From NCBI RefSeq assembly GCF_006345805.1, contig NC_043025.1, positions 12,400,001 through 12,464,000 of the forward strand: DNA of 64,000 bases, in the 5' to 3' direction. Positions 22,089 to 63,340 of this stretch are shown in pieces; position 1 is the first letter of the stretch, and every line of letters starts with the position of its first letter. The notes beneath the pieces were generated by a model. That model saw nothing but the letters and a program-made list of their open reading frames with translations, was not told the origin of the DNA and ran no database searches. Both the position numbers and the translations under genes were made by a program. The stretch comes from Octopus sinensis. Its lineage: Eukaryota.

Positions 22089-24021
22089 AGTCCTCTAAAG
22101 ACTTTCCATCAACATCTCATGTTAAAATAAGTTCCAAACATCAGAATGATAACAAGTTATTTCCAAAAATCAACTGAAATAAAGTCAGACTATTTGAAGA
22201 GAGAAATATGATTAAACAAGAAGGGTCAACATTGCCATAATAACAACTGCTTCTTAGTTGAAGTTTTGTATTTCAGTCACTGTACAAATACAGAGTAGAT
22301 ATATTTTGTTATTGAAACCAGTACAAATTCCACAAATGCTGAAGACATGGCAAAGAGAATACACAAATCAGTGACTACAAAACCACTAGTGATGGTGACT
22401 AATTGACAAGATTTGTAGCATATAGCATAAGATTTTTGCCTGACTGCATGCTTTTTTCTTTTCCCTTTTTTGCTCTCTCTTGCTTCTGTGTTATTTCAAG
22501 AGGCCATCACACTTCATAAATATAAAGCCCATCCCTGATCACAAACAATGACGGATTTTCCTTTGTCCCCATGACACAAATTACACAAACGCACACACAC
22601 ACACACACACACACACATACAAATGCACACACACATGCATACATGTACAATCAAAATTCCAAGAAAAAGAGATTTAACATGGATTAGGGGCAGGAGTGGC
22701 TGTGTGGTAAGTAGCTTGCTTACCAACCACATGATTCCAGGTTCAGTCCCACTGCGTGGCACCTTGGGCAAGTGTCTTCTGCTATAGCCCCGGGCCAACC
22801 AAAGCCTTGTGAGTGGATTTGGTAGACGGAAACTGAAAGAAGCCCATCGTATATATATATATGTAGGAGTGGCTGTGTGGTAAGTAGCTTGCTTACCAAC
22901 CACATGGTTCCGGGTTCAGTGCATAGCGTGGCACCTCGGGCAAGTGTCTTCTACTATAGCCTTGGGCCGACCAAAGCCTTGTCAGTGGATTTGGTAGACG
23001 GAAACTGAAAGAAGTCCGTCGTATATATATATATATATTATATATGTAGGAGTGGCTGTGTGGTAAGTAGCTTGCTTACCAACCACAGGGTTCCGGGTTC
23101 AGTCCCACTGCGTGGCACCTTGGGCAAGTGTCTTCTGCTATAGCCTTGGGTCGACGAAAGCCTTGTGAGTGGATTTGGTAGATGGAAACTGAAAGAAGCC
23201 TGTCGTATATATATATGTAGGAGTGGCTGTGTGGTAAGTAGCTTGCTTACCAACTACATGGTTCCAGGTTCAGTCCCACTGCCTTCCACCTTGGGCAAGT
23301 GTCTTCTGCTATAGCCTCAGGCCGACCAAAACCTTCTGAGTGGATTTGGTAGACGGAAACTGAAAGAAGCCCATCGTATATATATATATATATGCCAGTG
23401 GCATGTGTAAAAAGATTCGAGCGAAGTCATTGCCAGTACCGCCTGACTGGCCCCTCCGTGCTGGTGGCACTTTATAAGCACCCACTACACTCTCGGAGTG
23501 GTTGGCGTTAGGAAGGGCATCCAGCTGTAGAAACTCTGCCAGATCAAGATTGAAGCCTGGTTGCAGCCATCTGGTTCGCCAGCCCTCAGTCAAAATCGTC
23601 CAACCCATGCTAGCATGGAAAGCGGACGTTAAACGATGATGATGACGATGATGATGATGAAACCAATGGAAATTTGGATAAGCAGCCGGGTCACCATACA
23701 ACTCATGATTCTAACACTTTTATATGACATATCCCTGTACACCCCACCAACACCACCACCACCATTACACACTCTCTCTCTCTCTCTCTCTCGATGTCTC
23801 TTAAGGGTCTTCCACAGTACAAAACACTTGAAAGAAATTTTTACTGTAGTAGACATAACAACTTCGGTGAAGTGGTTAGTAGCCATGGTGATGGTGGCAG
23901 CTGTGTTGGTGAAGCCGGTGGTGGTGGTGGTGGTAGTAGTAGTAGTAGTATAGTAGTAGTAGTAGTAGTAATAGTAGTAGTAGTAGTGGTGGTGTTGGTG
24001 GTGATAAGTGTAGTAGGGGTT

Positions 24022-26488
24022 CTCAGCATATTACATATGCGTCATACAATCTGCCTTTCATTCTGAGGGAGAAGCCCTTAGTTACCAACAAAGATAGAAT
24101 CCCTCTGAACTTTGCCCAGCTCATTCTTATTCTAGAAGCACCAGGTTCCAGACTGTGCCTGGAGGGTAACTTTCCAGGTGCAATCCCATGGTCAGGTCAT
24201 GACCGAAGGGGCTTCTCAGCATGTTACATATGCGTCATACAATCTGCCTTTTACTCTGAGGGAGCCCTTAGTTACCAACAAAGATAGAATCCCTCTGAAC
24301 TTTGCCCAGCTCATTCTTATTCTAGAAGCACCAGGTTCCAGACTTGTGCCTGGGAGGGTAACTTTCCAGGTGCAATCCCATGGTCAGGTCATGACCGAAG
24401 GGGGTCTCAGCATGTTACATTGCGTCATACAATCTGCCTTTTACTCTGAGGGAGAAGCCTTAGTTACCAACAAAAGATAGAATCCCTCTGAACTTTGCCC
24501 AGCTCATTCTTATTCTAGAAGCACCAGGTTCCAGACTTGGCCTGGGAGGGTAACTTTCCAGGTGCAATCCCATGGTCAGGTCATGACCGAAGGGGGTCTC
24601 AGCATGTCACATGTGTCATACAATCTGCCTTTTACTCTGAGGGAGAAGCCCTTAGTTACCAACAAAAGATAGATCCCTCTGAACTTTGCCCAGCACATTC
24701 TTATTCTAGAAGCACACAGGTTCCAGACTTGTGCCTGGGAGGGTAACTTTCCAGGTGCAATCCCATGGTCAGGTCATGACCGAAGGGGCTCTCAGCATGT
24801 TACATATGCGTCATACAATCTGCCTTTTACTCTGAGGGAAAGAAGCCCTTAGTTACCGACAAAGATAGAATCCCTCTGAACTTTGCCCAGCACATTCTTA
24901 TTCTAGAAGCCCAGGTTCCAGACTTGTGCCTGGGAGGGTAACTTTCCAGGTGCAATCCCATGGTCAGGTCATGACCGAAGGGGCTCTCAGCATGTTACAT
25001 ATGCGTCATACAATCTGCCTTTTACTCTGAGGGAGAAAGAAGCCCTTAGTTACCGACAAAGATAGAATCCCTCTGAACTTTGCCCAGCACATTCTTATTC
25101 TAGAAGCACCAGGTTCCAGACTTGTGCCTGGGAGGGTAACTTTCCAGGTGCAATCCCATGGTCAGGTCATGACCGAAGGGGCTCTCAGCATGTTACATAT
25201 GCGTCATACAATCTGCCTTTTACTCTGAGGGAGAAGCCCTTAGTTACCAGCAAAGATAGAATCCCTCTGAACTTTGCCCAGCTCATTCTTATTCTAAGCA
25301 GCACCAGGTTCCAGACTTGTGCCTGGGAGGGTAACTTTCCAGGTGCAATCCCATGGTCAGGTCATGACCGAAGGGGCTCGCAGCATGTTACATATGCGTC
25401 ATACAATCTGCCTTTTACTCTGAGGGAGAAGCCCTTAGTTACCAACAAAAGATAGAATCCCTCTGAACTTTGCCCAGCACATTCTTATTCTAGAAGCACC
25501 AGGTTCCAGACTTGTGCCTGGGAGGGTAACTTTCCAGGTGCAATCCCATGGTCAGGTCATGACCGAAGGGGGTCTCAGCATGTACACATGTGTCATACAA
25601 TCTGCCTTTTACTCTGAGGGAGAAGCCCTTAGTTACCAACAAAAGATAGAATCCCTCTGAACTTTGCCCAGCACATTCTTATTCTAGAAGCACCAGGTTC
25701 CAGACTTGTGCCTGGGAGGGTAACTTTCCAGGTGCAATCCCATGGTCAGGTCATGACCGAAGGGGCTCTCAGCATGTTACATATGCGTCATACAATCTGC
25801 CTTTTACTCTGAGGGAGAAAGAAGCCCTTAGTTACCGACAAAGATAGAATCCCTCTGAACTTTGCCCAGCACATTCTTATTCTAGAAGCACCAGGTTCCA
25901 GACTTGTGCCTGGGAGGGTAACTTTCCAGGTGCAATCCCATGGTCAGGTCATGACCGAAGGGGCTCTCAGCATGTTACATATGCGTCATACAATCTGCCT
26001 TTTACTCTGAGGGAGAAAGAAGCCCTTAGTTACCGACAAAGATAGAATCCCTCTGAACTTTGCCCAGCACATTCTTATTCTAGAAGCACCAGGTTCCAGA
26101 CTTGTGCCTGGAGGGTAACTTTCCAGGTGCAATCCCATGGTCAGGTCATGACCGAAGGGGCTCTCAGCATGTTACATATGCGTCATACAATCTGCCTTTT
26201 ACTCTGAGGGAGAAAGAACCCTTAGTTACCGACAAAGATAGAATCCCTCTGAACTTTGCCCAGCACATTCTTATTCTAGAAGCACCAGGTTCCAGACTTG
26301 TGCCTGGGAGGGTAACTTTCCAGGTGCAATCCCATGGTCAGGTCATGACCGAAGGGACTCTCAGCATGTTACATATGCGTCATACAATCTGCCTTTTACT
26401 CTGAGGGAGAAGCCCTTAGTTACCAACAAAGATAGAATCCCTCTGAACTTTGCCCAGCACATTCTTATTCTAGAAGCACCAGGTTCCA
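24022..26488. repeat. ~195-bp tandem repeat, ~12.7 copies, intronic in the phosphatase gene
   Basis: Unit starts at ~24022, 24215, 24406, 24598, 24791, 24986, 25184, 25379, 25574, 25768, 25966, 26163 and 26359. Confidence 0.95.
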
Positions 26489-29788: not shown

Positions 29789-29888
29789 NNNNNNNNNNNN
29801 NNNNNNNNNNNNNNNNNNNNNNNNNNNNNNNNNNNNNNNNNNNNNNNNNNNNNNNNNNNNNNNNNNNNNNNNNNNNNNNNNNNNNNNN
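29789..29888. other. Assembly gap (100 N)
   Basis: Run of n. The true length is unknown. Confidence 1.
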
Positions 29889-34852: not shown

Positions 34853-35251
34853 TTTGCTGATGCTGATGATGATGATGATGTTAGTCGTAGTATGGCCAGC
34901 GTGGCATCACCCCCAATGACAACAACCACTGTATGCCACTGTTAATTCCATGAGCTAGCTGTTTCATTGAATTGGCAAACTGGAACCCAAATTCCAGTAA
35001 GATACTTAAATCTCAAATATTATTCTATTTATGGGAAGAACCTTTGACTTTTATTCCCCCACATATAATGCTTTGCTTTCTCAGTTGTGGCGAAAGAGTA
35101 CAGCAGGGATCACCACCACCCCGTGCAGGAGCCTCGTGGAGCTTTTTAGGTGTTTTCGTTCAATAAACACTCACAACGCCCGGTCTGGGAATCGAAACCA
35201 CGATCCTACGACCATGAGTCCGCCGCCCTAACCACTGGGCCATTGAACCTC

Positions 35252-35282
<31 letters not shown>

Positions 35283-35283
<1 letters not shown>

Positions 35284-35465
35284 AAGGGAAAGTTTACGAA
35301 AATAAACAAAAGACGAAGGCAGGTGGAGTGCAAACAAACAAATGTATTAGTATGGCGCTCAGGAATAGAAGAAGTCTTTTACGTTTCGAGCCTACGCTCT
35401 TCAGCAGAAAGATACACAGAAAAAACAAGGAGAGAAAAAAATGCATGTAGCAACTAACGATCTAA
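35283..35465 (-). mobile_element. Penelope-like terminal remnant with minimal hammerhead-like motif; second copy at ~62249-62420
   Basis: Near-identical ~180-bp sequence at two loci, both inserted in (TA)n. Minus strand reads TCTTT-CTGCTGA-A-GAGC-gtag-GCTC-GAAAC-GTA-AAAGA. Confidence 0.6.
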
Positions 35466-35470
35466 TGCAC

Positions 35471-35568
35471 TTCATATTTAAGGCTCTGATGAAGTTATAA
35501 GGTGTTACTCAGACACTCAACTATGAGTCCACTGCACCATATAACTGAAACGACTGTAAGCCAATGAA
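35471..35568 (+). ncRNA. Type I hammerhead ribozyme with intact catalytic core
   Basis: Stem I GGCU(35482-85)/AGCC(35559-62), extended by UUCAU/AUGAA. CUGAUGA 35486-92. Stem II AGUUAUA/UAUAACU plus GGUG/CACC. GAAA 35547-50. Stem III AC-gacu-GU. GUA cleavage triplet ending at 35558. Confidence 0.8.
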
Positions 35569-35732
35569 TTTCATAAGATAATCATTCATTCCTTTATGAT
35601 CTCATTTTCTTATAAATCTTTAATGTATATAATATATGTAATCAATTGTTTCCTCACCCCAAGTATTCCCAAATTTGTTTTCCATATTTTTTAGCTCTAA
35701 TGTTCTTTTTCCTTTTTTCTTTTCTTCTTCAG

Positions 35733-36215
35733 ATGCTGGTATTATCTGCTGTGGTTTTGTTTATATCATCCACCTTCTTAGCACCTGCGGAGGCTTCGCC
35801 CCTACCGAAGTCGGCATGCAAAGAACCGAATGTGATACTCTCCAACTCAGTCATCTTCGGGACGGTCAACGGCGAAAACGCTGCGGTCAACGATGACGAG
35901 GATGAAGACTACAACACCTCGTCTTTAATATTATCTGTCCAGGAAAGAGCCGTGTGCCCTTGGAAAATAGTTAAGCTCAAAGATGACAATCGATACCCTC
36001 GCGTCTTGCAGACAGCACAATGCAAAACAAGAACTTGGGGCAACAAATTATGCGTTCCAGTCACGTACAATGTCACGGTGCTCTACCGGACGGAGGAGGA
36101 ATGTATGACGTTGCCTAATTCAAATGAAACAAAGGTATATGCTTACAAGGCAGATGTCATTCAACTGGCCACGGCCTGCACATCTGTACTTGATGCTACC
36201 GCTGTTGAACAATAG
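35733..36215 (+). CDS. IL17: Interleukin-17-like secreted cytokine, 160 aa
   Basis: ATG directly follows a polypyrimidine/ag acceptor. Hydrophobic signal peptide, then IL-17 motifs RAVCPW, DDNRYPRVLQTAQC, CVPVTYNVTVLYR, ACTSV. Candidate AATAAA near 36505. An upstream exon is implied but was not located. Confidence 0.88.
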   Translation: MLVLSAVVLFISSTFLAPAEASPLPKSACKEPNVILSNSVIFGTVNGENAAVNDDEDEDYNTSSLILSVQERAVCPWKIVKLKDDNRYPRVLQTAQCKTRTWGNKLCVPVTYNVTVLYRTEEECMTLPNSNETKVYAYKADVIQLATACTSVLDATAVEQ

Positions 36216-36730: not shown

Positions 36731-37145
36731 TATTGTTGTATTTCGGAATGGTCATTTTGCCAGTTTAGCCAATAAAAATACACGCACTATATATTTGGTG
36801 TTATTTTGCTTCAGTGTTATTTATTTTTTACAGTAATCTTAATCTTATTTCGGCCAGAGTTCTTTCGTCACACTCCTGTGACTGCATCAGTGGTCCTTTG
36901 TTTTCTTCTTTCTTATTTGTGTCTCTCCTAACTAACCTGTTAGTAAGGAGGGACACACAAATAAGAAAGAAGAAAGCAAAGGACCACTGATGAGGTCACA
37001 GGAGTGTGACGAACGAACTCTGGTGAAATAAGATTAAGATTAACGTAAAAAATAAATAACACTGAGGCAAATTAATACCAAATATATAGTGTGTGTATTT
37101 TTATTGGCTAAACTGACAAAATGACCATTCCGAAATATAACAATA
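36731..37145. mobile_element. ~415-bp imperfect palindrome; probable inverted Penelope-like terminal repeat with a hammerhead-like motif in each arm
   Basis: Arms of about 205 bp. Right arm reads ACCA-CTGATGA-G-GTCAC-aggagt-GTGAC-GAAC-GAAC-TC-TGGT. The left arm holds the reverse complement. Confidence 0.7.
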
Positions 37146-37660: not shown

Positions 37661-39132
37661 CCGTAAATCCTCAAGTATAATCCGCATTTTTTCCCCCAAA
37701 GTTTAAAGGTCAAAATCCCTAGTGCGTACTATACACGAGGTTAAAAATGAAAAATATTTTCTAAGCAATGTCCGAGTCTCTATTTGCTGTCTGGCAATGT
37801 TTATTCAGACGCATTTTGTGATGTCAGGCGAGACAATACCTTAAGCTAAGCCTGAAAGCAATGAAGTCATAAAAGAATCATCCATAACTTGCAATAAGCA
37901 ACATTTATTAAACGTTATTACTGTTATTTCTTGATTTTCTGCAAACAAAATGCACAAAAAAGCTACACGTTTGCATTATGTTATATATACAATAATAATA
38001 AAGGACGTTACCGTATACATTTTTACAAACCAAGGACGTTAGAAAAGGGGTCCGTATTATACACAAGGTTTAGGTTTTTCAAATGTACAGCCCCCTAAAA
38101 ATCCCCTGCATATACACGTTTGCATTATGTTATATATACAGTAATAATAAAGGACGTTACCGTATACAGTTTTACAAACCAAGGACGTTATATAGACCTC
38201 CTTGACTCAAGTTAGAGAAGGGGTGCGTATTATACACAAGGTTTAGATTTTTCAGAGGCAGAGCCCTCTAAAAATCCCCTGTGTATACACGTTTGTATTG
38301 TTATATATACAATAACAATAAAGGACGTTATATAGACCTCCTTGACTCAAGTTAGAGAAGGGGTGCGTATTATACACAAGGTTTAGATTTTTCAGAGGCA
38401 GAGCCCCCTAAAAATCCCCTGCGTATACACGTTTGCATTATGTTATATATGTGAGGGCGCGTGGCTTAGTGGTTAGGGCATTCGGCTCATGATCGTAAGG
38501 TTGTGAGTTCGATTCCCGGCGACGCGTTGTGTCCTTGAGCAAGACACTTTATTTCATGTTGCTCCAGTCCACTCAGCTGGCAAAAATGAGTTGTACTTGT
38601 ATTTCAAAGGGTCAGCCTTGTCACTCTCTGTGTCACGCTGATTATCCCCGAGAACTACGTTAAGGGTACACGTGTCTGTGGAATGCTCAGCCATTTGCAC
38701 GTTAATTTCACGAGCAAGCTGTTCCGTTGATCGTATCAGCTGGGACCCTCGTCGTCGTAACCGGCGGAGTCTTATTATGTTATATATATACAATAATAAT
38801 AAAGGACGTTACCTAATACATTTTTACAAACTAAGGACGTTATATAGACCTCCTTGACTCAAGTTAGAGAAGGGGTGCGTATTATACACAAGGTTTAGAT
38901 TTTTCAGAGGCAGAGCCCCCTAAAAATCCCCTGCGTATACACGTTTGCATTATGTTATATATATACAATAATAATAAAGGACGTTACCTAATACATTTTT
39001 ACAAACTAAGGACGTTATATAGACCTCCTTGACTCAAGTTAGAGAAGGGGTGCGTATTATACACAAGGTTTAGATTTTTCAGGGGTAGAGCCCCCTAAAA
39101 ATCCCCTGCGTATTATACTCAAGGATTTACGG
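37661..39132. mobile_element. Non-autonomous TA-flanked DNA transposon (Tc1/mariner-pogo-like) with internal tandem repeats and a nested SINE
   Basis: TIRs ccgtaaatcctcaagtataa / ttatactcaaggatttacgg (18/20 match) with TA on both sides. Confidence 0.85.
38451..38771 (+). mobile_element. Full-length tRNA-derived SINE with target-site duplication
   Basis: A box tggcttagtgg, B box gttcgattcc, central gtgtccttgagcaagacac (Meta-domain-like). attatgttatatat is present on both sides. Confidence 0.88.
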
Positions 39133-41787: not shown

Positions 41788-43837
41788 TATAATAATATAA
41801 TAATGAAATTATTGTATACAGTGCTCAGGTGCACCACAAATTGTCAGAAAGTGCATATAAAGTACATGCAGTAATGTAAAAATGTCTGGGAAGCGAAAAA
41901 TGTATGAGTCAGATACATGCCTGTGTGTGTATGGAGGGGAGAAGATCAGGTGTAGTGTTGGCGAATCTCAGGAAGCATGGAAGTTTCCAAGGATGCAGTG
42001 CTCCGACAACTAACAACTGATGCCGGCAGTTTGTTCCATGCTTCAGCGTGTGTATGGAGGGGAGGAGATCAGGTGTAGTGTTGGCGAATCTCAGGAAGCA
42101 TGGAAGTTTTGAAGGATGCAGTGCTCCGACAACTAACAACTGATGCCGGCAGTTTTGTTCCCTGCTTCAGCGGGTGTATGGAGGGGAGGAGATCAGGTGT
42201 AGTGTTGGCGAATCTCAGGAAGCATGGAAGTTTTGAAGGATGCAGTGCTCCGACAACTAACAACTGATGCCGGCAGTTTGTTCCATGCTTCAGTGTGTGT
42301 ATGGAGGGGAAAAGATCAGGTGTAGTGTTGGCAAATCTCAGAAAGCATGGAAGTTTTGAAGGATGCAGTGCTCCGACAACTAACAACTGATGCCGGCAGT
42401 TTGTTCCATGCTTCAGCGTGTGTATGGAGGGGAGAAGATCAGGTGTAGTGTTGGCAAATCTCAGAAAGTATGGAAGTTTTGAAGGATGCAGTGCTCCGAC
42501 AACTAACAACTGATGCTGGCAGTTTGTTCCATGCTTCAGTGTGTGTATGGAGGGGAAAAGATCAGGTGTAGTGTTGGCGAATCTCAGAAAGCATGGAAGT
42601 TTTGAAGGATGCAGTGCTCCGACAACTAACAACTGATGCCGGCAGTTTGTTCCATGCTTCAGTGTGTGTATGGAGGGGAGAAGATCAGGTGTAGTGTTGG
42701 CGAATCTCAGGAAGCATGGAAGTTTTCAAGGATGCAGTGCTCCGACAACTAACAACTGATGCCGGCAGTTTGTTCCATGCTTCAGCATGTGTATGGAGGG
42801 GAGAAGATCAGGTGTAGTGTTGGCGAATCTCAGGAAGCATGGAAGTTTTGAAGGATGCAGTGCTCCGACAACTAACAACTGATGCCGGCAGTTGTTCCAT
42901 GCTTCAGCGTGTGTATGGAGGGGAGAAGATCAGGTTGTAGTGTTGGCGAATCTCAGGAAGCATGGAAGTTTTGAAGGATGCAGGGCTCCGACAACTAACA
43001 ACTGATGCCGCAGCAGTTTGTTCCATGCTTCAGCGTGTGTATGGAGGGGAGAAGATCAGGTGTAGTGTTGGCGAATCTCAGGAAGCATGGAAGTGTTGAA
43101 GGATGCAGTGCTCCGACAACTAACAACTGATGCCGGCAGTTTGTTCCATGCTTCAGTGTGTGTATGGAGGGGAGAAGATCAGGTGTAGTGTTGGCGAATC
43201 TCAGGAAGCATGGAAGTTTTGAAGGATGCAGTGCTCCGACAACTAACAACTGATGCCGGCAGTTTGTTCCATGCTTCAGCGTGTGTATGGAGGGGAGGAG
43301 ATCAGGTGTAATGTTGGCGAATCTCAGAAAGCATGGAAGTTTTGAAGGATGCAGTGCTCCGACAACTAACAACCGATGCCGGCAGTTTGTTCTATGCTTC
43401 AGCGTGTGTATGGAGGGGAGGAGATCAGGTGTAGTGTTGGCGAATCTCAGAAAGCATGGAAGTTTTGAAGGATGCAGTGCTCTGACAACTAACAACTGAT
43501 GCCAGCAGTTTGTTCCATGCTTCAGCGTGTGTATGGAGGGGAGGAGATCAGGTGTAGTGTTGGCGAATCTCAGAAAGCATGGAAGTTTTGAAGGATGCAG
43601 TGCTCTGACAACTAACAACTGATGCCAGCAGTTTGTTCCATGCTTCAGCGTGTGTATGGAGGGGAGAAAATCAGGTGTAGTGTTGGCGAATCTCAGAAAG
43701 CATGGAAGTTTTGAAGGATGCAGTGCTCCGACAACTAACAACTGATGCCAGCAGTTTGTTCCATGCTTCAGCAACTCTCAGCGTGAAAAAATGTTTCCTG
43801 AAGTCATGGGAGCTGTGCTGTTTTCTGACTTTGTAAA
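41788..43837 (-). mobile_element. 5'-truncated CR1 LINE whose ORF2 C-terminus is amplified into a satellite
   Basis: RKHFFTLRVAEAWNKL.ASVVSCRSTASFKTSML.EIRQHYT*, followed by a 3'UTR and an (ATT)-like tail at 41788. Confidence 0.85.
41923..43772. repeat. 120-bp tandem repeat, ~15 copies
   Basis: The unit tgtgtgtatggagggg...ttccatgcttcagc repeats with few substitutions. Confidence 0.95.
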
Positions 43838-46152: not shown

Positions 46153-47029
46153 TCAAGATCGTTCTGACCCTCCTTTCATTTTGTCCTTGCTCTCCCCTTT
46201 TCTCCTACCATCACAGTTGCTTTCACTCTCTTCCATCACCCCCTCCTCTCCTCTCACTTCCTCTCCTCTTCCTCCTCCTCCTCCTACCGACACTCTCCTC
46301 TCGCCACCACCACAAACCTTGTTGTCCCCGCCGACGACCCCGCCGCCGACGTCTCCGTCGTCGCCGTCACAGGAGGCTGCGACGGAGCTGCGTTCGCCAC
46401 CGCCGCCACCACCGCCGGCACACTCACTACTGCTGCTGCTGCTGCTGCTCCCACAACTGTCGCCTCCGCTGCTGCTGATGCTGCTGATGCTGTTGCCGAC
46501 GCTGTTGCAGCTGTCATCATCATCGTCATCGTCATCATCATCTGCATCGTTTCCATTCTCCACATCAGCATCGTTGTCATCGTCGTCATCCTCCTCATCA
46601 TCATTGCTCTCATCTATATCAGCATCGTCACCATGGCTACTGTTGTCGTCGTCGTCGTCATCGTCCACCTCCCCGACGACCCCAACGCCGTACATGAACT
46701 GAAAATGTTCGTTGACATCGGTGAAGATGGTGAAATCGTCATCGTCATCGTCGTCGTCGGAGTCTGACGACGTCCAAATCATGTTGTAGAAGTCGTCGTC
46801 AAAGACCTCCATCGCGACGGCGGCCGCTTGCTCTCGCTCGGAGATGAACTCCCAGAGCAGCTGCTCCGATATGCAGGATATGGTGCCATCAGCGTCGGAT
46901 CGGTGCCGCCGAGAGCCGGGTTTCTCCGGTGACGCCAGCTTGCCGTCCGGATAGGCGTGTTTGTAGAAGCAGGAGTCACCAAACGGACACTTGGACCGGC
47001 CCATGTCAAAGTACTTGCAAGGTTTCTTC
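46153..47029 (-). CDS. MKRN: Makorin terminal exon: last CCCH finger plus long Asp/Ser/Gly-rich tail
   Basis: Acceptor ctttcacag|[37 protein letters not shown] at 46153-46155. The distal tail is less certain than the finger. Confidence 0.88.
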
Positions 47030-47039
47030 CTGTGAAAGA

Positions 47040-47650
47040 GAAGAGAGGTGAATGGGTGAGTGAGAGTGTGAGTGAATGAGTGAGAGTGTCTGAGAATGTA
47101 GGAGTGAATGTGAGTGTGAAAGAGTGAGAGAGTGACTGAGTGAGAGTGAGTGAGTGAGAGTGTGTGTGAGAGAGAGTGTCTGAGAATGTAGGAGTGAATG
47201 TGAGTGTCAAAGAGTGAGAAAGTGACTGAGTGAGAGTGTGAGAGAGAGAGAGTGAGTGAGAGAGTTGTGTGAGTGTGAGTGCGAGTTAAGTGAGTGTGAG
47301 TGAAGTGAGTGTGAATGTGAGTTAAGTGAGTGAGAGTGTGAGTTAAGTGAGTGTGAGAGTGAGTGAGAGTGTGAGTGAGTGAGTCTGAGAATGTAGGAGT
47401 GAATGTGAGTGTGAAAGAGTGACAGTGAGTTAAGTGAGTGTGACAGTGAGTGAGAGTTAAGTGAGTGTGAGTGTCTGAGAATGAATGCAGGAGTGAATGT
47501 GAGTGTGTGAGATTGAGTGTGAGTGAGAGTGAAAGTGAATGAGTGTCAGTGAATGAATGTGAGAGTGAGTGTGTGAGATTGAGTGAGAGTGTAAGTAAAT
47601 GAGTGTGAGTGAATGAATACAGGAGTATAAGAGACTTGATGAGACAGAGA
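47040..47650. repeat. Degenerate (TGAG)/(GA)-rich tract in the last Makorin intron
   Basis: Directly visible. Confidence 0.8.
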
Positions 47651-47719
47651 GAGAAAGGGACAAAGACATGGTGATTGACAGAGTGACCGACCCTAACACA
47701 GCTCCCAGTTTAAGAGTCC

Positions 47720-48594
47720 CAACCCGGCCAAAACCACCTCTGGCTCTGAGTACAAATGTCTTGTTTTCATAAGCTTTGAATTAAAATCTTCCACCAAACC
47801 TTAGTCTTCATCTCAATCGAAGGAGAGGGGCTTTCTCCGTCCGGGTTGCGGATCCGTGGGATAAGCTGTCGGACGAGATAGTGAAGATGCCGACGACCGC
47901 TCGGTTCAAAGTCTCCCTTGACCACAAATGGCCTGAACTTTTTACATGAACACCACCCTGTACATAACTCCATGTCCCCCTACATGGCCTTGCTTTTTGC
48001 TTTTTGAGCCAAAAAATTAACTTAACAATTTATGTTTTGAATTAAAATCTTCCACCAAACCTTTGTCACAATTTATGTTCCTAACACTAGCTAAATGATA
48101 ACTAAGTTATTTTATTAAATTCTTTGTTATATTTAAAATTAATTGAAAGAAACACAGAGCATCTCAACAGAAATATATGGTAACAAAAGGGTTAAGATAT
48201 ATAATAGAGAAATAATTCTTAACCCTTTTGATACCAACCTGGCTGAAACCACTTCTGGCTCTGTAGTACAAATGTCTTGTTTTCATAAGTTCTGAATTAA
48301 AATCTTCCACCAAACCTTAATCACAATTATGTTCCTAACACTAGCTTAATGATAACTAAGTTATTTTACTAAATTCTTTGTTATATTTAAAATTAATTGA
48401 AAGAAATACGGAGCATCTCAACAGAAATATGGTAACAAAAGGGTTAAAATATATAATAGAGAAACAATTCTTAACCCTTTTGTTACTAACCCGGCCAAAA
48501 CCATTTCTGGCTCTGAGTACAAATGTCTTGTTTTCATAAGTTTTGAATTAAAATCTTCCACCAAACCTTAGTCACAATTTATGTTCCTAACACC
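47720..48594. mobile_element. Tandem piggyBac-like MITEs interrupted by a CR1 fragment
   Basis: Same unit and spacer as the 21.6-kb and 59.7-kb loci. Confidence 0.8.
47805..48030 (+). mobile_element. CR1-type LINE 3' fragment
   Basis: RRRGAFSVRVADPWDKLSDEIVKMPTTARFKVSLDHKW* is the ORF2 C-terminal motif. Confidence 0.8.
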
Positions 48595-48999
48595 ATTTAT
48601 CTCTCTCCCATACAAAATCTCTCTCTCTCTGGTTCATTCCATGACATGACACACAATGACACACCCACCACAGTTCTTTCACACCCACCTACCATACCCT
48701 CACCGCACCCACCCACCACACGCCTACCATACCCCCACTACACCCACCTACCATACCCTCACCACACCCACCCACCATAACCCACGGCACCCACCCACCA
48801 TACCCCCTCTACACCTACCCAACATACCCCAGCGCACCCACTCACCATAACCCACCATACCGCACCACACACCTTCCTTTCAAGCCCACCAGTCATACTC
48901 CACCGCACCCAACCACCCCACCCCACACACACACTCCTCCCTCCCATCCACCCACACAGCACCACACCACACCACACACACAACACTTGTCTTTCTTAC

Positions 49000-49110
49000 C
49001 TCATTTTTTCTTTGTAGTCATTTATAATTTTATCTTTCTGCTCTTTGTCTTCCACCCACACATTACTGGGGGTCACGAAATTTGATGATATACGGCACTG
49101 GGGACAGCTC
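49000..49110 (-). CDS. MKRN: Makorin exon completing the RING (SCPQCRISSNFVTPSNVWVEDKEQKDKIINDYKEKM)
   Basis: Found by hand; not in the ORF track. Acceptor ttgtattatag|G, donor AG|gtaaga, 111 nt, phase 2 to phase 2. Confidence 0.93.
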
Positions 49111-49256
49111 CTATAATACAAAAAAGAGACAGAGAAAAAAAAAAAAGCAAAAAAGGTTACAAAAATTAAAAAAACAAATCCATTCGTTAACTGATCAATG
49201 GAGATTTAACCGTTTAGCACAGAGATCACCCCATCAAATGTAACGATTATTTAACA

Positions 49257-49915
49257 AGTGGACTGGTGGTACGTAAAATCACTATCCGAATCGTGGCCGC
49301 TGCCAGCACCGCCTCGACTGGCTTCCGTGCCCGTGGCACATAAAAAGCACCATCCGAATCGTGGCCGATGCCAGCGCTGCCTCGACTGGCTTCCGTGTCG
49401 GTGGCACGTAAAAAGCACCATCCGAATCGTGGCCGATGCCAAAGCCGCCTCGACTGGCTTCCGTGCCGGTGGCATGTACAAAGCACCATCCGAATAGTGG
49501 CCGATGCCAGTGCCATCTCGACTGGCTTCCGTGCCGGTGGCATGTAAAATGCACCATCCGAATAGTGGCCGATGCCAGCGCCGCCTCGACTGGCTTCCGT
49601 GCCGGTGGCATGTAAAAAGCACCATACGAATAGTGGCCGATGCCAGCGCCGCCTCGACTGGCTTCCGTGCCGGTAGCACATAAAAAGCACCATCCGATTA
49701 TGGCTGTTTGCCAGCCTCGTTTGGCACCTGTGCGGGTGGCACGTAAAAAGCACCCACTACACTCACGGAGTGGTTGGCGTTAGGAAGGGCATCAAGTTGT
49801 AGAAACAATGCCAGATAAGACCTGAGCCTGGTGCAGCCTCCTGGCTTCCCAGACCCCAGTCGAACCGTCCAACCCATGCTAGCATGGAAAACGGACGTTA
49901 AACGATGATGATGAT
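49257..49915 (+). mobile_element. SINE/retroposon family C, representative copy; others at ~3138-3895, 13405-13830, 15287-15668, 23395-23660 and 30200-30705
   Basis: Core ggttggcgttaggaagggcatccagc, 3' tail gcatggaaaacggacgttaaac(gat)n, and a variable ~60-bp tandem repeat upstream. Confidence 0.88.
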
Positions 49916-50151
49916 TTGTCTTGAATTAATCATGCATCCTTTCAATGGTGTGATTGTTTATTTTTAGAATGAGGTTATAGTATATAGGCGCAGGAGTGGC
50001 TGTGTGGTAAGTAGCTTGTTTACCAACCACATGGTTCCGGGTTCAGTCCCACTGCGTGGCATCTTGGGCAAGTGTCTTCTACTACAGCCTCGGGCTGATT
50101 AAAGCCTTGTGAGTAGATTTGGTAGACGGAAACTTAAAGAAGCCCGTCGTA

Positions 50152-50187
<36 letters not shown>

Positions 50188-50189
<2 letters not shown>

Positions 50190-53100
50190 GCATAAATTAT
50201 TTATAATATATATATAATATATGCATAAATTATTTATAATATATATATATATATATGCATAAATTATTTATAATATATATTATATATGCATAAATTATTT
50301 ATAATATATATATATATATGCATAAATTATTTATAATATATATATATATATGCATAATTATTTATAATATATATATATATATGCATAAATATTTATAATA
50401 TATATATATATATGCATAAATTATTTATAATATATATATATGCATAAATTATTTATAATATATATATATATATATGCATAAATTATTTATAATATATATA
50501 TATATGCATAAATTATTTATAATATATATATATATATGCATAAATTATTTATAATATATATATATATATGCATAAATTATTTATAATATATATATATATA
50601 TGCATAAATTATTTATAATAATATATATATATATGCATAAATATTTATAATATATATATATATGCATAAATTATTTATATATATATATATGCATAATTAT
50701 TTATAATATATATATATATATATGCATAAATATTTATAATATATATATAATATGCATAAATTATTTATAATATATATATATATATATGCATAAATTATTT
50801 ATAATATATATATATATATGCATAAATTATTTATAATATATATATATATATATGCATAAATTATTTATAATATATATATATATATGCATAAATTATTTAT
50901 AATATATATATATGCATAAATTATTTATAATATATATATATATATATGCATAAATTATTTATAATATATATATATATATGCATAAATTATTTATATATAT
51001 ATATATATATATGCATAAATTATTTATAATATATATATATATATGCATAAATTATTTATAATATATATATATATATATGCATAAATTATTTATAATATAT
51101 ATATATATGCATAATTATTTATAATATATATATATATATATGCATAAATTATTTATAATATATTATATATGCATAAATTATTTATAATATATATATATAT
51201 GCATAAATTATTTATAATATATATATATATATATATGCATAAATTATTTATAATATATATATATATATGCATAAATTATTTATAATATATATATATGCAT
51301 AAATTATTTATAATATATATATATATATATGCATAAATTATTTATAATATATATATATATATGCATAATTATTTATAATATATATATATATATGCATAAT
51401 TATTTATAATATATATATATATATGCATAAATTATTTATAATATATATATATATATATGCATAAATTATTTATAATATATATATATATATGCATAAATTA
51501 TTTATAATATATATATGCATAAATTATTTATAATATATATATATATATATGCATAAATTATTTTATAATATATATATATGCATAAATTATTTATAATATA
51601 TATATATATATATGCATAAATTATTTATAATATATATATATATGCATAAATTATTTATAATATATATATATATATGCATAAATTATTTATAATATATATA
51701 TATATATGCATAAATTATTTATAATATATATATATAATATATGCATAATTATTTATAATATATATATAATATGCATAAATTATTTATAATATTATATATA
51801 TATGCATAAATTATTTATAATATATATATGCATAAATTATTTATAATATATATATATATTATGCATAAATTATTTATAATATATATATATATATGCATAA
51901 ATTATTTATAATATATATATATATATGCATAAATATTTATAATATATATATATATATATGCATAAATTATTTATAATATATATATATATATATGCATAAA
52001 TTATTATAATATATATATATATATATATGCATAAATTATTTATAATATATATATATATGCATAAATTATTTATAATATATATATATATATGCATAAATTA
52101 TTTATAATATATATATATGCATAAATTATTTATATATATATATATATGCATAAATTATTTATAATATATAATTATATATGCATAAATTATTTATAATATA
52201 TATTATATATGCATAAATTATTTATAATATATATATATATATGCATAAATTATTTATAATATATATATATATATGCATAAATTATTTATAATATATATAT
52301 ATATATGCATAATTATTTTATAATATATATATATATGCATAAATTATTTATAATTTATATATATATATGCATAAATTATTTATAATAATATATATATATG
52401 CATAATTATTTATAATATATATAATATATATGCATAAATTATTTATAATATATATATATATGCATAAATTATTTATATATAATATATATAATGCATATTA
52501 TTTATAATATATATATATATATGCATAAATTATTTATAATATATATTATATGCATAAATTATTATATATATATATATATAGCATAAATTATTTATAATAT
52601 AATATATATATGCATAAATTATTTATAATATATATATTATATGCATAAATTATTTATAATATATATATATATATGCATAAATTATTTATAATATATATTA
52701 TATATGCATAAATTATTTATAATATATATATATGCATAAATTATTTATAATATATAATATATATATATATGCATAAATTATTTATAATATATATATTATA
52801 TATGCATAAATTATTTATAATATATATATATATATGCATAAATTATTTATAATATATATATATATATGCATAAATTATTTTATATAATATATATATATAT
52901 ATGCATAAATTATTTTATAATATATATATATATATGCATAAATTATTTATAATATATATATATATGCATAATTATTTATAATATATATATATATATATGC
53001 ATAAATTATTTATAATATATATATATATATATGCATAAATTATTTATAATTATATATATATATGCATAAATTATTTATAATATATAATATATATGCATAA

Positions 53101-53828
53101 TTATTTATAATATATAATATATATATGCATAAATTATTTATAATATATATATATATATGCATAAATTATTTATAATATATATATATATATATGCATAAAT
53201 TATTTATAATATATATATATATGCATAAATTATTTATAATATATATATGCATAAATTATTTATAATATATATATATATATATGCATAAATTATTTATAAT
53301 ATATATATATATATATGCATAAATATTTATAATATTATATATATATGCATAATTTTTTAATATATTATATATATGCATAAATTATTTATAATATATATAT
53401 ATATATGCATAAATTATTTATATATATATTATATATGCATAAATTATTTATAATATAATATATATATGCATAAATTATTTATAATATATATATATATATG
53501 CATAAATTATTTATAATATATATATATATATGCATAAATTATTTATAATATATATATATATATGCATAAATTATTTATAATATATATATATATATGCATA
53601 AATTATTTATAATATATATATATATATATGCATAAATTATTTATAATATATATATATATATGCATAAATTATTTATAATATATATATATATATGCATAAA
53701 TTATTTATAATATATATATATATTATATGCATAATTATTTATAATATATATATATATATGCATAAATTATTTATAATATATATATATATATATGCATAAA
53801 TTATTTATAATATATATATATATATATA
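50188..53828. repeat. ~30-bp AT-rich minisatellite atgcataaattatttataat(at)n, roughly 120 copies
   Basis: Directly visible. Copy number is estimated from length divided by ~30. Confidence 0.95.
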
Positions 53829-54050
53829 AAGTTAATCCAAACAAGAAAACACAGAAAAAAAGAGAAAAAACACAGCAACACGAGGACGTGGAACAATTAA
53901 AGTATTATTGGACGCTCAGGAAAGAAGGGAAGGAGGAGGGTTTGACGTTTCGAGCGGAGCTCTTCGTCGGAAACAAGGAGAAGGAAAGATCCCAAGAAGG
54001 GAAGACAGAGGAAAAAAATATTTTTGCTGGTGGTGCTCAAGAGATCACGT
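53828..54050 (-). mobile_element. Penelope-like terminal remnant with minimal hammerhead-like motif
   Basis: Minus strand 53974->53940 reads GTTT-CCGACGA-A-GAGC-tcc-GCTC-GAAAC-GTC-AAAC. Related to the 35283 family (shared 'gctcaggaa'). Confidence 0.55.
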
Positions 54051-54061
54051 GTATATATATA

Positions 54062-54123
<62 letters not shown>

Positions 54124-55265
54124 CATAGGAGTGGCTATGTGGTAATGTCAACAAGGCGGGCGAAATGCTTAGTGGTATTTCGTCTGGTCGACTTTGCCTT
54201 TCATCCTTTCGGGGTCGATAAATTAAGTACCAGTTATGCACTGGGGTCGATGTAATCGACCTAATACCTATGTCTGTCCTTGTTTCTCCCCTCTGTGTTT
54301 AGCCCCTTGTGGGTAGTAAAGAAATAGGTATTTCGTCTGCCGTTACGTTCTGAGTTCAAACTCCGCCGAGGTCGACTTTGTTTTTCATCCTTTCAGGGTC
54401 GATGAATTAAGTACCAGTTATGCACTGGGGTCGATATAATCGACTAAATCCGTTTGTCTGTCGTTGTTTGTCCCTTCTATGTTTAAGCCCCTTGTGGGCA
54501 ATAAAGAAATAGGTATTTTATCTGCCGTTACGTTCTGAGTTCAAACTCCGCCGAGGTCGACTTTGCCTTTCATCCTTTCGGGGTAGATAAATTAAGTACC
54601 AGTTATGCACTGGTGTTGATTTAATCGACTTAATCCCTTTGTCTGTCCTTGTTTGTCCCTTCTATGTTTAGCCCCTTGTGGGCAATAAAGAAATAAGAAA
54701 CTTGCTTCACAGCCACATGGTTCCGTAACTTAGCAGTTCAGCTAAAATGACCAACAAAATAAATGCCAGACTCGAGAAAAAAATAAAGACAAGGGTCAGT
54801 TTAATTCAAATGAAATTCCTCAAGGTGGTGCTCCAGCATGGCCACAGTCTAATGACGGAAACAAGTTAAAGATACCCCACTCCCCAAACACCACATTTCC
54901 ATCCCAAATATTGCTTAAGCAACCATTTGAATAGAACACAAAAGCCAACATCTGCACAATGGCCCACAAGGAGTGGACAAGAGAGAGACCTTGAACAAGT
55001 CTCACAACCATTGTGGTGGTACTAGGAAAGTGAAATAAGATAACAATGGTATCTTCTCGTAGTAAAAGTTGTCTTCCGGCTACAACTGCTCCCATGAGAA
55101 ACAATGAGGTGGAGCCAGAAGATGAATGACTAGGTTTGACACTGTCATAAGAATATACACACACCCACACGTGTGTATATGAGTGCGAATATGTATGCAT
55201 GTATATATATATGCCCCAATATTACACTATTTTCTTTAGTCAATACACTTTAAACTTATAAAATT

Positions 55266-56302: not shown

Positions 56303-56778
56303 ATTGCAGAATTGTCGCTCATCACAGCTTCTCAAATCGTCGCAGAAATATTAATTAATGTTTCAAACACCATTTCAATAACGATTCAGTTACTTAACTA
56401 ATTTCTATATTATTTTTTTTAATTAATGGAAACAGGGGCAGCATATATCAACAGAAATATAGTCCCAAAACGTTGAAAGAAAAAATAATTATACGTTGAA
56501 CTAAAAATGTCGATCCGACAATGCAGGGGAGGCAACTCTGCATCATATCTCCCTCTCACTCTCTCTCTCTATATATATATACTAAGTAATTAAGAGTTTG
56601 GCAACGATTTGCCTTGAGGCAAATCGTTGCTAAACACTTAATTACTTAGTATTACTTAAACCTTCCTTGAATGGGGCTTTTACATGCCGAACTCTACTTG
56701 GTGAAATTAATGATTATTTCTAAATTAATTAATTTCACCCTTTATTATTATTAATAAATATATATATATATATATATA

Positions 56779-57120: not shown

Positions 57121-57131
57121 ATATATATATA

Positions 57132-58153: not shown

Positions 58154-58271
58154 TAACTAAGGATTACATTTGACAGAGTAATCCGAATCTTAAAGGGATT
58201 AAAAGAAACACAGAAAAAAAAAAGGGGGGGGGAAGAAAAGCCCCTGGAGGGTTAGAAATCTTAAATCTTAC

Positions 58272-59630: not shown

Positions 59631-59665
59631 CTATAACAGACAGAGGAAACATAAGTTGAAAGTGT

Positions 59666-61205: not shown

Positions 61206-61210
61206 GAACA

Positions 61211-62457: not shown

Positions 62458-62531
<74 letters not shown>

Positions 62532-63306: not shown

Positions 63307-63340
63307 CTACAAAAGAAAAAAAGAAAACAAAAATAATACA

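What the first reader, a model, noticed from the sequence alone, without database searches (positions are those of the whole stretch)
35471..35568. Intact type I hammerhead ribozyme ~170 nt upstream of the IL-17 coding exon, sense strand
Seen: every conserved hammerhead position is present in order. Stem I GGCU/AGCC (continued by UUCAU/AUGAA across an asymmetric internal loop), CUGAUGA, a 7-bp stem II (A10.1-U11.1) extended by GGUG/CACC around a ~30-nt insert, GAAA, a 2-bp stem III with a GACU loop, and a GUA triplet predicting cleavage after 35558. It lies in what must be the intron or leader preceding the acceptor at 35732. Known: short-stem-III type I hammerheads occur in Penelope-like elements and retrozymes and often need to dimerise; gene-associated hammerheads exist in vertebrate introns and the rodent Clec2 3'UTRs. 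Inference: this is the only core-intact copy I found among about seven hammerhead-like motifs in the window. It may be a recent insertion, or it may be a retained switch in which co-transcriptional self-cleavage competes with splicing of a cytokine pre-mRNA. I know of no described ribozyme control of an invertebrate IL-17.
Basis: partly seen in the sequence, partly recalled or inferred. Interest (0 to 1): 0.85.

Follow-up and report, generated by a model that had tools for sequence, protein, structure and literature searches.

The report
Lone hammerhead-like motif upstream of octopus IL-17
A sequence matching the minimal hammerhead ribozyme consensus does sit about 170 bases upstream of an octopus IL-17-like gene, but every independent check suggests a weak or inactive relic or look-alike, not a ribozyme switch controlling the gene.

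Summary
The motif is present exactly as described (35482-35562, extended 35471-35568). It has CUGAUGA, a 7-bp helix II, GAAA, a 2-bp helix III, GUA and a 4-bp helix I. It is rarer than chance for one window: about 0.0015 expected, and 1 of 2519 permuted-core decoys scored. A 2.7-Gb genome should still hold tens of chance matches.

Every test not used to find it is negative:
- No Rfam hammerhead model matches, even at E<=10.
- The 10.1-11.1 pair is A-U, not G-C.
- Loop 3 is not palindromic, and the dimer helix is worth only -1.1 kcal/mol.
- No loop-loop contacts are recognisable.
- Helix I pairing probability falls to 0.005 and helix III never exceeds 0.12 in transcript context.
- There is no second copy, tandem partner or Penelope-like ORF nearby.

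The only relative I could fetch, Octopus vulgaris, differs by 1.4%, so its identical motif carries no information. The cleavage site lies 174 nt from the acceptor, so only a very fast ribozyme could compete with splicing. A TATAAA at 35611 could mean the motif is never transcribed.

Verdict: probably a neutral hammerhead-like motif, either a retroelement relic or chance. The switch idea is unsupported. Interest is low.

The parts
35471..35475 (+). Distal 5' strand of the helix I extension (UUCAU). It pairs with 35564-35568.
   Evidence: Pairs TA, TA, CG, AT, TA. Pairing probability is 0.2-0.46 in isolation and <=0.002 in contexts of 383 nt or more.
35482..35485 (+). Helix I 5' strand, GGCU (positions 2.4-2.1).
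   Evidence: Four Watson-Crick pairs with 35559-35562. P is about 0.7 in the 98-mer, 0.26 in 251 nt and 0.005 in 383 nt.
35486..35492 (+). Core box C3 U4 G5 A6 U7 G8 A9 (CUGAUGA).
   Evidence: This is one of 10 CTGATGA heptamers in the window, against 7.9 expected by chance.
35493..35546 (+). Helix II domain. A 7-bp stem starts with A10.1-U11.1, followed by an A/A internal loop, a 4-bp GGUG/CACC stem and a 30-nt loop holding a small ACUCA/UGAGU hairpin.
   Evidence: Inverted repeat I3, 12-nt arms, 92% complementary. Pair probabilities are 0.89-0.999 in every context and the stem is in the MFE fold.
35547..35550 (+). Core box G12 A13 A14 A15.1 (GAAA).
35550..35557 (+). Helix III: A15.1-U16.1 and C15.2-G16.2 closing the tetraloop GACU.
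   Evidence: Pairing probability <=0.12 in all contexts. As a dimer helix, ACGACUGU self-pairs at 6 of 8 positions with a central A.C/C.A mismatch, and the duplex is worth -1.1 kcal/mol.
35556..35558 (+). Cleavage triplet G16.2 U16.1 A17. The predicted scissile bond is between 35558 and 35559.
   Evidence: Sequence. Cleavage itself was not tested.
35559..35562 (+). Helix I 3' strand, AGCC (positions 1.1-1.4).
35563..35590 (+). Competing local hairpin: AAUGAAU 35563-35569 pairs with AUUCAUU 35584-35590. It sequesters the 3' strand of the helix I extension.
   Evidence: Read from the sequence. It is consistent with the drop in helix I extension probability in longer contexts and with the weak hairpin-type hit on the minus strand.
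35284..35456 (.). Repeat R1, a 173-bp interspersed repeat that ends just 5' of the motif. The motif is not part of it.
   Evidence: A 91% identical copy lies at 62250-62421 and ends at the same point. A 36-nt fragment lies at L001 143-178. All copies abut (TA)n.
35611..35616 (+). TATAAA, a possible proximal promoter element. A TSS about 30 nt downstream would leave the motif untranscribed.
   Evidence: Sequence only. This is inference and is untested.
35695..35732 (+). 3' splice site signals: CUCUAAU branch-like element, a 27-nt all-pyrimidine tract 35703-35729, and CAG.
   Evidence: Sequence. The O. vulgaris model joins an upstream exon (donor AAG|GTAAGT) exactly here.
35733..36215 (+). Complete IL-17-like coding sequence: 160 aa with a signal peptide, in a single exon.
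   Evidence: ORF. Pfam IL17 PF06083 scores 40.3 bits against a cut-off of 24. It is 98% identical to the O. vulgaris protein and 60-65% to the O. bimaculoides protein.

Best explanation
This is a solitary sequence that satisfies the minimal type I hammerhead consensus but is not an efficient ribozyme and does not regulate the IL-17-like gene.

I cannot separate two origins, and I weigh them about equally.
(a) A decayed or atypical fragment of a hammerhead-bearing retroelement. Its layout (4-bp helix I, 7-bp helix II, minimal helix III) resembles the min-hammerheads of Penelope-like elements.
(b) A chance match in which CUGAUGA and GAAA happen to flank a stable local hairpin.

The expected behaviour is the same either way. 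If the region is transcribed as part of the long first intron, helix II forms, but helices I and III rarely do. Any cleavage would be far slower than the few seconds RNA polymerase II needs to reach the acceptor 174 nt downstream. The intron is then spliced out and degraded as usual. If transcription starts at a proximal promoter downstream of the motif, it is never RNA at all.

Shown here: the motif, its rarity, the failed independent hallmarks and the fold predictions. Inferred: low catalytic rate, no effect on splicing, and the origin.
For: Independent hallmarks of genuine families all fail.
- No Rfam hammerhead model matches at gathering threshold or at E<=10 in a 351-nt search.
- A10.1-U11.1 replaces the highly conserved G10.1-C11.1. 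There is no unpaired base between A9 and 10.1, and loop 3 is non-palindromic. These are criteria 2-4 of PMC4209133.
- There is no family with covariation. No second copy exists in the window or in L001. The adjacent repeat R1 stops before the motif in both full copies.

Folding is unfavourable.
- The hammerhead fold is 5.5 kcal/mol above the MFE in a 383-nt context.
- P(helix I) is 0.005 and P(helix III) is <=0.12.
- The z-score of the 98-mer is only -1.26.

Dimerisation is unlikely. The helix III duplex is worth -1.1 kcal/mol, and there is no tandem partner.

Literature points the same way.
- Metazoan min-hammerheads are nearly inactive in vitro even as dimers (PMC4209133).
- Minimal-descriptor hits are mostly false positives, and minimal hammerheads lacking tertiary contacts are far slower (PMC6155905).
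- Slowly cleaving intronic hammerheads do not impair splicing (PMC2995048).
- The one validated intronic ribozyme that competes with splicing sits about 9.9 kb from the next exon, with a half-life of 2-3 min (PMC10919898). Here the distance is 174 nt.

For the relic origin:
- The motif is rare by chance in one window.
- Its helix lengths match PLE min-hammerheads.
- Penelope-like elements are present and recently active in O. vulgaris (PMC13282606).
- 235 Hammerhead_1 loci were reported in the giant squid (PMC6962438).

For the chance origin: about 65 matches per 2.7 Gb are expected.
Against: - The per-window chance probability is low, about 0.0004-0.0015 and lower still for a 7-bp helix II. 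A pure accident is therefore not comfortable unless many windows were screened.
- All 13 consensus core positions are intact. A long-decayed relic would be expected to have lost some of them.
- Secondary-structure energies ignore the tertiary core, so folding predictions cannot rule out activity.
- Rfam models penalise the 44-nt insert in helix II and the tiny helix III, so a negative scan is not proof.
- Conservation beyond O. vulgaris (1.4% divergence) could not be examined.
- No cleavage or transcript data were available.
Confidence: 0.82

Rival explanations
1. It is a genuine self-cleaving hammerhead of retroelement origin that still cleaves, slowly or only with a partner or host factors. 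It has no role in IL-17 expression and is a passenger in the intron.
For: - The consensus core is complete and helix II is very stable.
- Helix III (1 bp beyond A15.1-U16.1, plus a tetraloop) is in the range typical of invertebrate type I hammerheads (PMC4209133; PMC7229834).
- The 4-bp helix I and 7-bp helix II match PLE min-hammerheads.
- The motif is rare by chance.
- Penelope-like elements and hammerhead loci exist in cephalopods.
Against: - There is no family, no tandem or nearby partner, and no PLE ORF or pLTR context.
- The 10.1-11.1 pair is A-U.
- Loop 3 is non-palindromic and the dimer helix is weak.
- No Rfam model matches.
- Even bona fide metazoan min-hammerheads barely cleave in vitro.
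Confidence: 0.1
2. It is a retained (domesticated) ribozyme switch. Co-transcriptional self-cleavage in the 5' intron competes with splicing and tunes the output of the IL-17-like cytokine gene.
For: - The motif is on the sense strand, 174 nt upstream of a strong acceptor.
- Precedents exist for intronic ribozymes: amniote HH9/HH10 (PMC6155905) and the CPEB3 ribozyme, which modulates its host mRNA (PMC10919898).
- The motif is identical in O. vulgaris.
Against: - The identity in O. vulgaris is uninformative. There are 507/509 identities across the whole 509-nt region including flanks, and 1.4% divergence overall.
- Domesticated intronic hammerheads keep canonical tertiary contacts and G10.1-C11.1. 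This motif has neither.
- The 174-nt distance gives Pol II only seconds before the acceptor is made. Slow hammerheads in introns do not affect splicing.
- The hammerhead fold is disfavoured in context.
- Transcription of the motif is itself unproven. The gene model is CDS-only, and there is a TATAAA at 35611.
Confidence: 0.03

Closest known systems
Minimal hammerheads (min-HHRs) in the pseudo-LTRs of Penelope-like retroelements (Cervera & de la Pena 2014, PMC4209133)
   Same: - Type I topology.
- Short helix I (4-5 bp there, 4 bp here).
- Long helix II (7-8 bp there, 7 bp here).
- Vestigial helix III.
- No loop-loop tertiary contacts.
- Mostly found as scattered single motifs in invertebrate genomes.
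- Very low intrinsic activity is expected.
   Different: - Here the 10.1-11.1 pair is A-U, not G-C.
- There is no unpaired base between A9 and 10.1.
- Loop 3 (GACU) is not palindromic.
- Helix II carries a 44-nt extension.
- No consensus family, pLTR or RT/GIY-YIG ORF could be linked to it.
Type I hammerheads of metazoan non-LTR retrozymes and satellite repeats, e.g. mussel, coral, axolotl, Schistosoma (PMC7229834)
   Same: - Type I topology.
- Helix III of 1-2 bp closed by a tetraloop.
- AT-rich surroundings.
- A need for dimerisation when helix III is weak.
   Different: Those occur in tandem arrays of 170-400-bp units, with a 6-bp helix I and 4-bp helix II, usually with interacting loops. 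Here there is a single copy, no tandem unit, different helix lengths, and no Rfam Hammerhead_1 hit.
Domesticated intronic hammerheads HH9/HH10 of amniotes in the RECK, CTCL and DTNB introns (de la Pena & Garcia-Robles 2010, summarised in PMC6155905)
   Same: Sense-strand hammerhead motif inside an intron of a protein-coding gene. This holds only if the O. vulgaris gene model is right.
   Different: Those are ultraconserved across classes, have canonical tertiary interactions, and match Rfam models. Here conservation cannot be tested beyond a 1.4%-diverged relative, the canonical features are missing, and no model matches.
CPEB3 intronic HDV-like ribozyme (PMC10919898), the validated case of self-cleavage competing with co-transcriptional splicing
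   Different: It is a different ribozyme class. It sits about 9.9 kb upstream of the next exon with a 2-3 min half-life matched to Pol II transit. Here the distance is 174 nt, and the motif is predicted to be slow.
Discontinuous hammerhead in rodent Clec2 3' UTRs (Martick et al. 2008, summarised in PMC6155905)
   Same: A gene-associated hammerhead in an immune-related gene.
   Different: That one is type III, split by a 150-1500-nt helix I insert, located in the 3' UTR, and experimentally active. This one is type I, upstream of the coding exon, with the insert in helix II, and untested.

Membership tests
Hammerhead ribozyme (general) | Conserved core C3 U4 G5 A6 N7 G8 A9, G12 A13 A14, A15.1-U16.1, H17, in order. 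| tested here: met
   CUGAUGA 35486-35492, GAAA 35547-35550, U35557, A35558.
Hammerhead ribozyme (general) | Three helices I, II and III radiating from the core. | tested here: inconclusive
   Helix II is robust (P>0.89). Helix I is 4 bp, with P of 0.7 in isolation but 0.005 in a 383-nt context. Helix III is 2 bp with P<=0.12.
Hammerhead ribozyme (general) | G10.1-C11.1 closing pair of helix II. It is highly conserved but not absolutely required. | tested here: not met
   A35493-U35546. The conservation is stated in PMC4209133.
Hammerhead ribozyme (general) | A score at or above the gathering threshold of an Rfam hammerhead covariance model (Hammerhead_1, _3, _II, HH9, HH10). | tested here: not met
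   No hammerhead hit at gathering threshold in the window or at E<=10 in 35350-35700. Caveat: the models penalise the long helix II insert.
Hammerhead ribozyme (general) | Site-specific Mg2+-dependent self-cleavage 3' of H17. | not testable with these tools
   This needs in vitro transcription and cleavage assays.
Penelope-like element min-hammerhead | Helix I of 4-5 bp and helix II of 7-8 bp, with helix III absent or minimal. | tested here: met
   Helix I 4 bp, helix II 7 bp, helix III 1 bp beyond A15.1-U16.1. The criterion is from PMC4209133.
Penelope-like element min-hammerhead | An unpaired nucleotide between A9 and 10.1. | tested here: not met
   A35493 pairs with U35546, which directly precedes G12. 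No register gives a 5' bulge without inserting a base before G12.
Penelope-like element min-hammerhead | Palindromic 15.2-16.2 positions and loop 3, allowing a dimeric helix III. | tested here: not met
   C15.2-G16.2 is complementary, but loop GACU is not palindromic. The self-duplex pairs 6 of 8 positions and is worth -1.1 kcal/mol.
Penelope-like element min-hammerhead | Membership of a multi-copy consensus family with covariation, located in a pLTR next to an RT/GIY-YIG ORF. | tested here: inconclusive
   No other copy exists in the window or in 34 kb of O. vulgaris. No RT/EN domain is in the neighbouring ORFs. No octopus genome could be searched.
Metazoan non-LTR retrozyme type I hammerhead | Tandem repeats of 170-400 bp, each carrying one hammerhead. 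| tested here: not met
   There is no tandem array at or near 35.4-35.7 kb and no second copy.
Domesticated intronic hammerhead (HH9/HH10-like) | Conservation at the orthologous intron across distant species. | not testable with these tools
   Only O. vulgaris was retrievable, at 1.4% divergence. Identity of the motif has no power. The O. bimaculoides locus is not on record.
Domesticated intronic hammerhead (HH9/HH10-like) | Sense-strand location within a transcribed intron. | tested here: inconclusive
   The motif is intronic in the O. vulgaris model. That model begins at its ATG and appears CDS-only, and exon 1 is missing from the window. TATAAA at 35611 offers an alternative TSS.

The most novel reading that the evidence does not exclude
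An octopus lineage has kept an atypical hammerhead (A10.1-U11.1, extended helix II) in the 5' intron of an IL-17-like cytokine gene. Its self-cleavage, perhaps helped by host factors or induced conditions, lowers productive splicing. That would be the first ribozyme-based control of an invertebrate immune cytokine.
Probability: 0.03. Interest if true: 0.75.

Novelty: new member of a known kind. Interest (0 to 1): 0.2.

Why it matters
If the motif were an active, conserved ribozyme, it would extend gene-embedded hammerheads from amniotes and rodents to molluscs and link RNA self-cleavage to innate immune signalling.

The evidence here points the other way. It is one more isolated minimal hammerhead-like motif of the sort that metazoan genomes hold in large numbers, and which specialists treat as retroelement debris or false positives unless family, covariation or activity data exist.

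There are two practical points. A complete consensus core plus two helices is not enough to call a ribozyme. And a cheap, decisive test exists: check the orthologous locus in other octopods and run one in vitro cleavage assay.

Tried and rejected
1. Rfam scans. I ran the whole window at gathering threshold, the whole window at E<=10 (top 150 of 270 listed), and 35350-35700 at E<=10. No hammerhead family appeared in anything listed. Most listed hits are microsatellite- or palindrome-driven miRNA false positives.

2. Orthologous loci.
- The window's IL-17 protein is not on record.
- The O. bimaculoides homologue P0002 has no contig on record.
- A profile search found no further homologues.
- A search with the neighbouring makorin-like exons found nothing.

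3. Public DNA collections.
- The motif pattern found nothing in the viral, prokaryotic-genome or metagenome collections.
- A 19-mer from repeat R1 gave only chance matches.
- None of these collections showed any octopus DNA.

4. Is the motif part of repeat R1? Rejected. Both full R1 copies end at the same point, 35456 and 62421, before the motif.

5. Retrozyme tandem unit. Rejected. There is no tandem array or partial duplication around the motif.

6. Target-site duplication. The direct repeat TCTAATGCACTT / TCTAATGTTCTT at 35461 and 35696 brackets the motif, but it is at chance level.

7. Other 'hammerhead-like motifs'. The 56-nt units at 56.8-57.0 kb carry CUGAUGA..GAAA, but the 'core' pairs into a stem and no Rfam hammerhead hit appears. 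The remaining CTGATGA sites lack a GAAA partner or helices.

8. Supplementary alignments of PLE hammerheads are not held, so no direct comparison with mollusc PLE hammerhead sequences was possible.

9. ARAGORN does not call the tRNA-like SINE head next to the motif.

Full report
**What is there.**
- Helix I: GGCU (35482-35485) pairs with AGCC (35559-35562).
- Core: CUGAUGA (35486-35492).
- Helix II: a 7-bp stem, AGUUAUA/UAUAACU (35493-35499 / 35540-35546). It continues after an A/A mismatch as GGUG/CACC around a 30-nt loop.
- GAAA (35547-35550).
- Helix III: A15.1-U16.1 plus C-G closing the tetraloop GACU.
- Triplet: GUA ends at 35558.
- A distal UUCAU/AUGAA pairing (35471-35475 / 35564-35568) can extend helix I across a 6x1 internal loop.
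- The layout is type I, open at helix I.
- Downstream, a 27-nt pyrimidine tract and CAG end at 35732. The ATG at 35733 opens a complete 160-aa ORF with a signal peptide. It scores 40.3 bits on Pfam IL17 against a cut-off of 24.

**Is it more than chance?** A descriptor modelled on the motif asked for CUGANGA, helix II >=4 bp with up to 70 nt, GAAA, helix III >=1 bp beyond A15.1-U16.1 with a 3-8-nt loop, UH, and helix I >=4 bp.
- It finds only this site on both strands of the window.
- It found nothing in 600 first-order Markov windows.
- Planting the core in 400,000 simulated flanks gives 0.0015 expected hits per window.
- On the real window, permuting the letters of the two core boxes (2519 decoys) gave one hit, and none with helix II >=7 bp.
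- So the per-window probability is roughly 4e-4 to 1.5e-3.
- The same rate predicts about 65 chance matches in a 2.7-Gb genome.
- The descriptor was written after seeing the motif, and I do not know how many windows or motif classes the first stage screened.
- The 'about seven hammerhead-like motifs' are not an enrichment. There are 10 CTGATGA heptamers against 7.9 expected. A relaxed descriptor adds only one junk hit.
- Several heptamers sit in a foldback element at 56.79-57.05 kb made of 56-nt units. There the 'core' pairs into a stem, and no Rfam hammerhead model matches.

**Tests independent of how the motif was found.** All are negative.
- No Rfam hammerhead model matches at gathering threshold or at E<=10 in a 351-nt search. 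The models do penalise the long helix II and the tiny helix III.
- Cervera and de la Pena (PMC4209133) list features that argue against randomness in metazoan Penelope-like-element (PLE) hammerheads. Here each one fails.
  - Consensus families with covariation: no second copy exists in the window or in 34 kb of O. vulgaris.
  - An unpaired base between A9 and 10.1: there is none.
  - G10.1-C11.1: the pair is A-U.
  - A palindromic 15.2-16.2 and loop 3: loop 3 is GACU.
- As a dimer, the helix III strand ACGACUGU pairs at only 6 of 8 positions and is worth -1.1 kcal/mol.
- There is no tandem or nearby partner.
- No loop-loop contacts of the canonical kind can be recognised.
- The one positive resemblance is architectural. 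A 4-bp helix I with a 7-bp helix II is what PLE min-hammerheads show.

**Folding.** The 98-mer's MFE contains helices I and II but not III, with z = -1.26.
- Helix II has P >0.89 in every context.
- Helix I falls from 0.7 in the 98-mer to 0.26 in 251 nt and 0.005 in 383 nt or more.
- Helix III never exceeds 0.12.
- The enforced hammerhead fold lies 5.5 kcal/mol above the MFE in the 383-nt context.
- A 7-bp hairpin at 35563-35590 competes for the 3' strand of the helix I extension.
- These energies ignore tertiary structure, so they lower the case for activity but do not exclude it.

**Surroundings.** Immediately upstream lie three features.
- A tRNA-like SINE head in minus orientation, about 35180-35250. 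I identified it by eye, and ARAGORN is negative.
- A (CA)n(TA)n microsatellite.
- A 173-bp repeat R1 (35284-35456). A 91% identical copy lies at 62250-62421 and a 36-nt fragment lies in O. vulgaris. All copies abut (TA)n.

Both full R1 copies end at the same point, so the motif, which starts 15-26 nt further on, is not part of R1. No RT or GIY-YIG domain is in the neighbouring ORFs. A 12-nt direct repeat brackets 35473-35695 but is at chance level. So there is no direct evidence that the motif belongs to a transposable element. PLEs are present and recently active in O. vulgaris (PMC13282606), and 235 Hammerhead_1 loci were reported in the giant squid (PMC6962438). A relic is therefore a reasonable prior.

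**Related sequence.** The IL-17 protein is 98% identical to an O. vulgaris protein and 60-65% identical to an O. bimaculoides protein.
- The O. vulgaris locus (GCA_951406725.2, OX597843.1; L001) is collinear with the window.
- It is identical across the motif, with 507/509 identities over 35252-35760.
- Overall substitution divergence is only 1.4% over 6.6 kb, so identity of a 98-mer is expected and says nothing about constraint.
- The window is therefore from the O. vulgaris species complex.
- No more distant locus could be fetched, and the public DNA collections showed no octopus sequence.

**Is it transcribed, and could it matter?** The O. vulgaris model joins an 81-nt exon 13 kb upstream (donor AAG|GTAAGT) to the CAG|ATG acceptor, which makes the motif intronic.
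- That model starts at its ATG and adds 27 poorly protein-like residues.
- The O. bimaculoides protein starts at the downstream Met.
- Exon 1 has no counterpart in the window, which has an assembly gap at 29789-29888.
- A TATAAA at 35611-35616 could drive a proximal TSS that leaves the motif untranscribed. This is inference from sequence only.
- Even if the motif is intronic, the scissile bond is 174 nt from the acceptor.
- Hammerhead cleavage within an intron did not reduce splicing in vivo, whereas a fast HDV ribozyme did (Dye et al. 2006 and Bentley lab work, as summarised in PMC2995048).
- The validated CPEB3 case works with a 2-3 min half-life over a 9.9-kb distance (PMC10919898).
- Minimal hammerheads without tertiary contacts are orders of magnitude slower than full ones (PMC6155905).
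- Metazoan min-hammerheads barely cleave in vitro.
- A motif with these features could not plausibly act within the few seconds available. This last step is inference.

**Conclusion.** I put about 0.82 on a neutral, catalytically poor hammerhead-like motif. That splits roughly evenly between a retroelement-derived relic and a chance match built on a stable hairpin. I put about 0.10 on a weakly active passenger ribozyme and about 0.03 on a regulatory switch.

The closest known things are PLE min-hammerheads (same helix proportions, other hallmarks missing) and retrozyme type I hammerheads (same helix III style, no tandem array). It resembles amniote HH9/HH10 only in position. Membership in the hammerhead class is met at the level of the consensus core only. 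The operational Rfam test and the G10.1-C11.1 hallmark are not met, and cleavage is untested.

No step had to be referred.

Noticed in passing
window 56790-57050 (minus strand): Foldback element flanked by (TA)n. It is built of one inverted and three direct 56-nt units, each holding CUGAUGA (or CCGAUGA), 9 nt, then GAAA. The MFE pairs the 'core' into a stem, and no Rfam hammerhead hit appears.
   Followed up: partly
window 35284-35456, 62250-62421; L001 143-178: A 173-bp interspersed repeat (R1). Its copies all start right after a (TA)n microsatellite. Two full copies end at the same base, and a 36-nt fragment lies inside a (TA)n tract in O. vulgaris. The family is unclassified. It may target (TA)n.
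   Followed up: partly
window 50150-53825: An AT-rich satellite with a 32-bp period, about 116 copies and 90% matches.
   Followed up: no
window 41925-43772 and 24015-26488: Two well-preserved tandem arrays: a 123-bp unit with 15 copies and a 195-bp unit with 12.7 copies, both at 96% matches. BLAST alignment to O. vulgaris suggests the 123-bp array is shorter there.
   Followed up: no
window 38246-38276 and 38386-38416: An Rfam IRE_II hit above gathering threshold (34.6 bits vs 30), with a weaker twin (28.3 bits). Both lie inside a 140-bp tandem duplication (38181-38450), about 2 kb downstream of the IL-17 stop codon. It is probably a repeat-borne hairpin rather than an iron-responsive element.
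   Followed up: no
window 36861-37016, 10950-11064, 56924-57015: Long near-perfect palindromes that hit plant miRNA covariance models on both strands (up to 53.8 bits, below gathering threshold). They look like MITE-like or foldback hairpins. The first lies about 650 nt downstream of the IL-17 stop codon.
   Followed up: no
window 6803-8113 (+), 8945-9427 (+), 46153-63440 (-): Other genes in the window.
- An intronless BAAT/acyl-CoA thioesterase-like ORF (Pfam BAAT_C, 136 bits).
- A Tc1/mariner DDE_3 transposase fragment.
- A multi-exon makorin-like CCCH zinc-finger gene on the minus strand. The RING domain is seen only as a weak precomputed hit on the O. vulgaris product.
   Followed up: partly
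window 29789-29888; L001 10001-10081: A 100-N assembly gap. Upstream of it the window is no longer collinear with O. vulgaris. The annotated first exon of the O. vulgaris IL-17 model has no counterpart in the window. That exon adds 27 low-quality residues and may be a prediction artefact.
   Followed up: partly
window 35180-35250 (minus orientation): A tRNA-like SINE head with A-box and B-box-like sequences directly abuts the (CA)n(TA)n tract upstream of R1. ARAGORN does not call it. Related SINE copies are frequent across the window.
   Followed up: no
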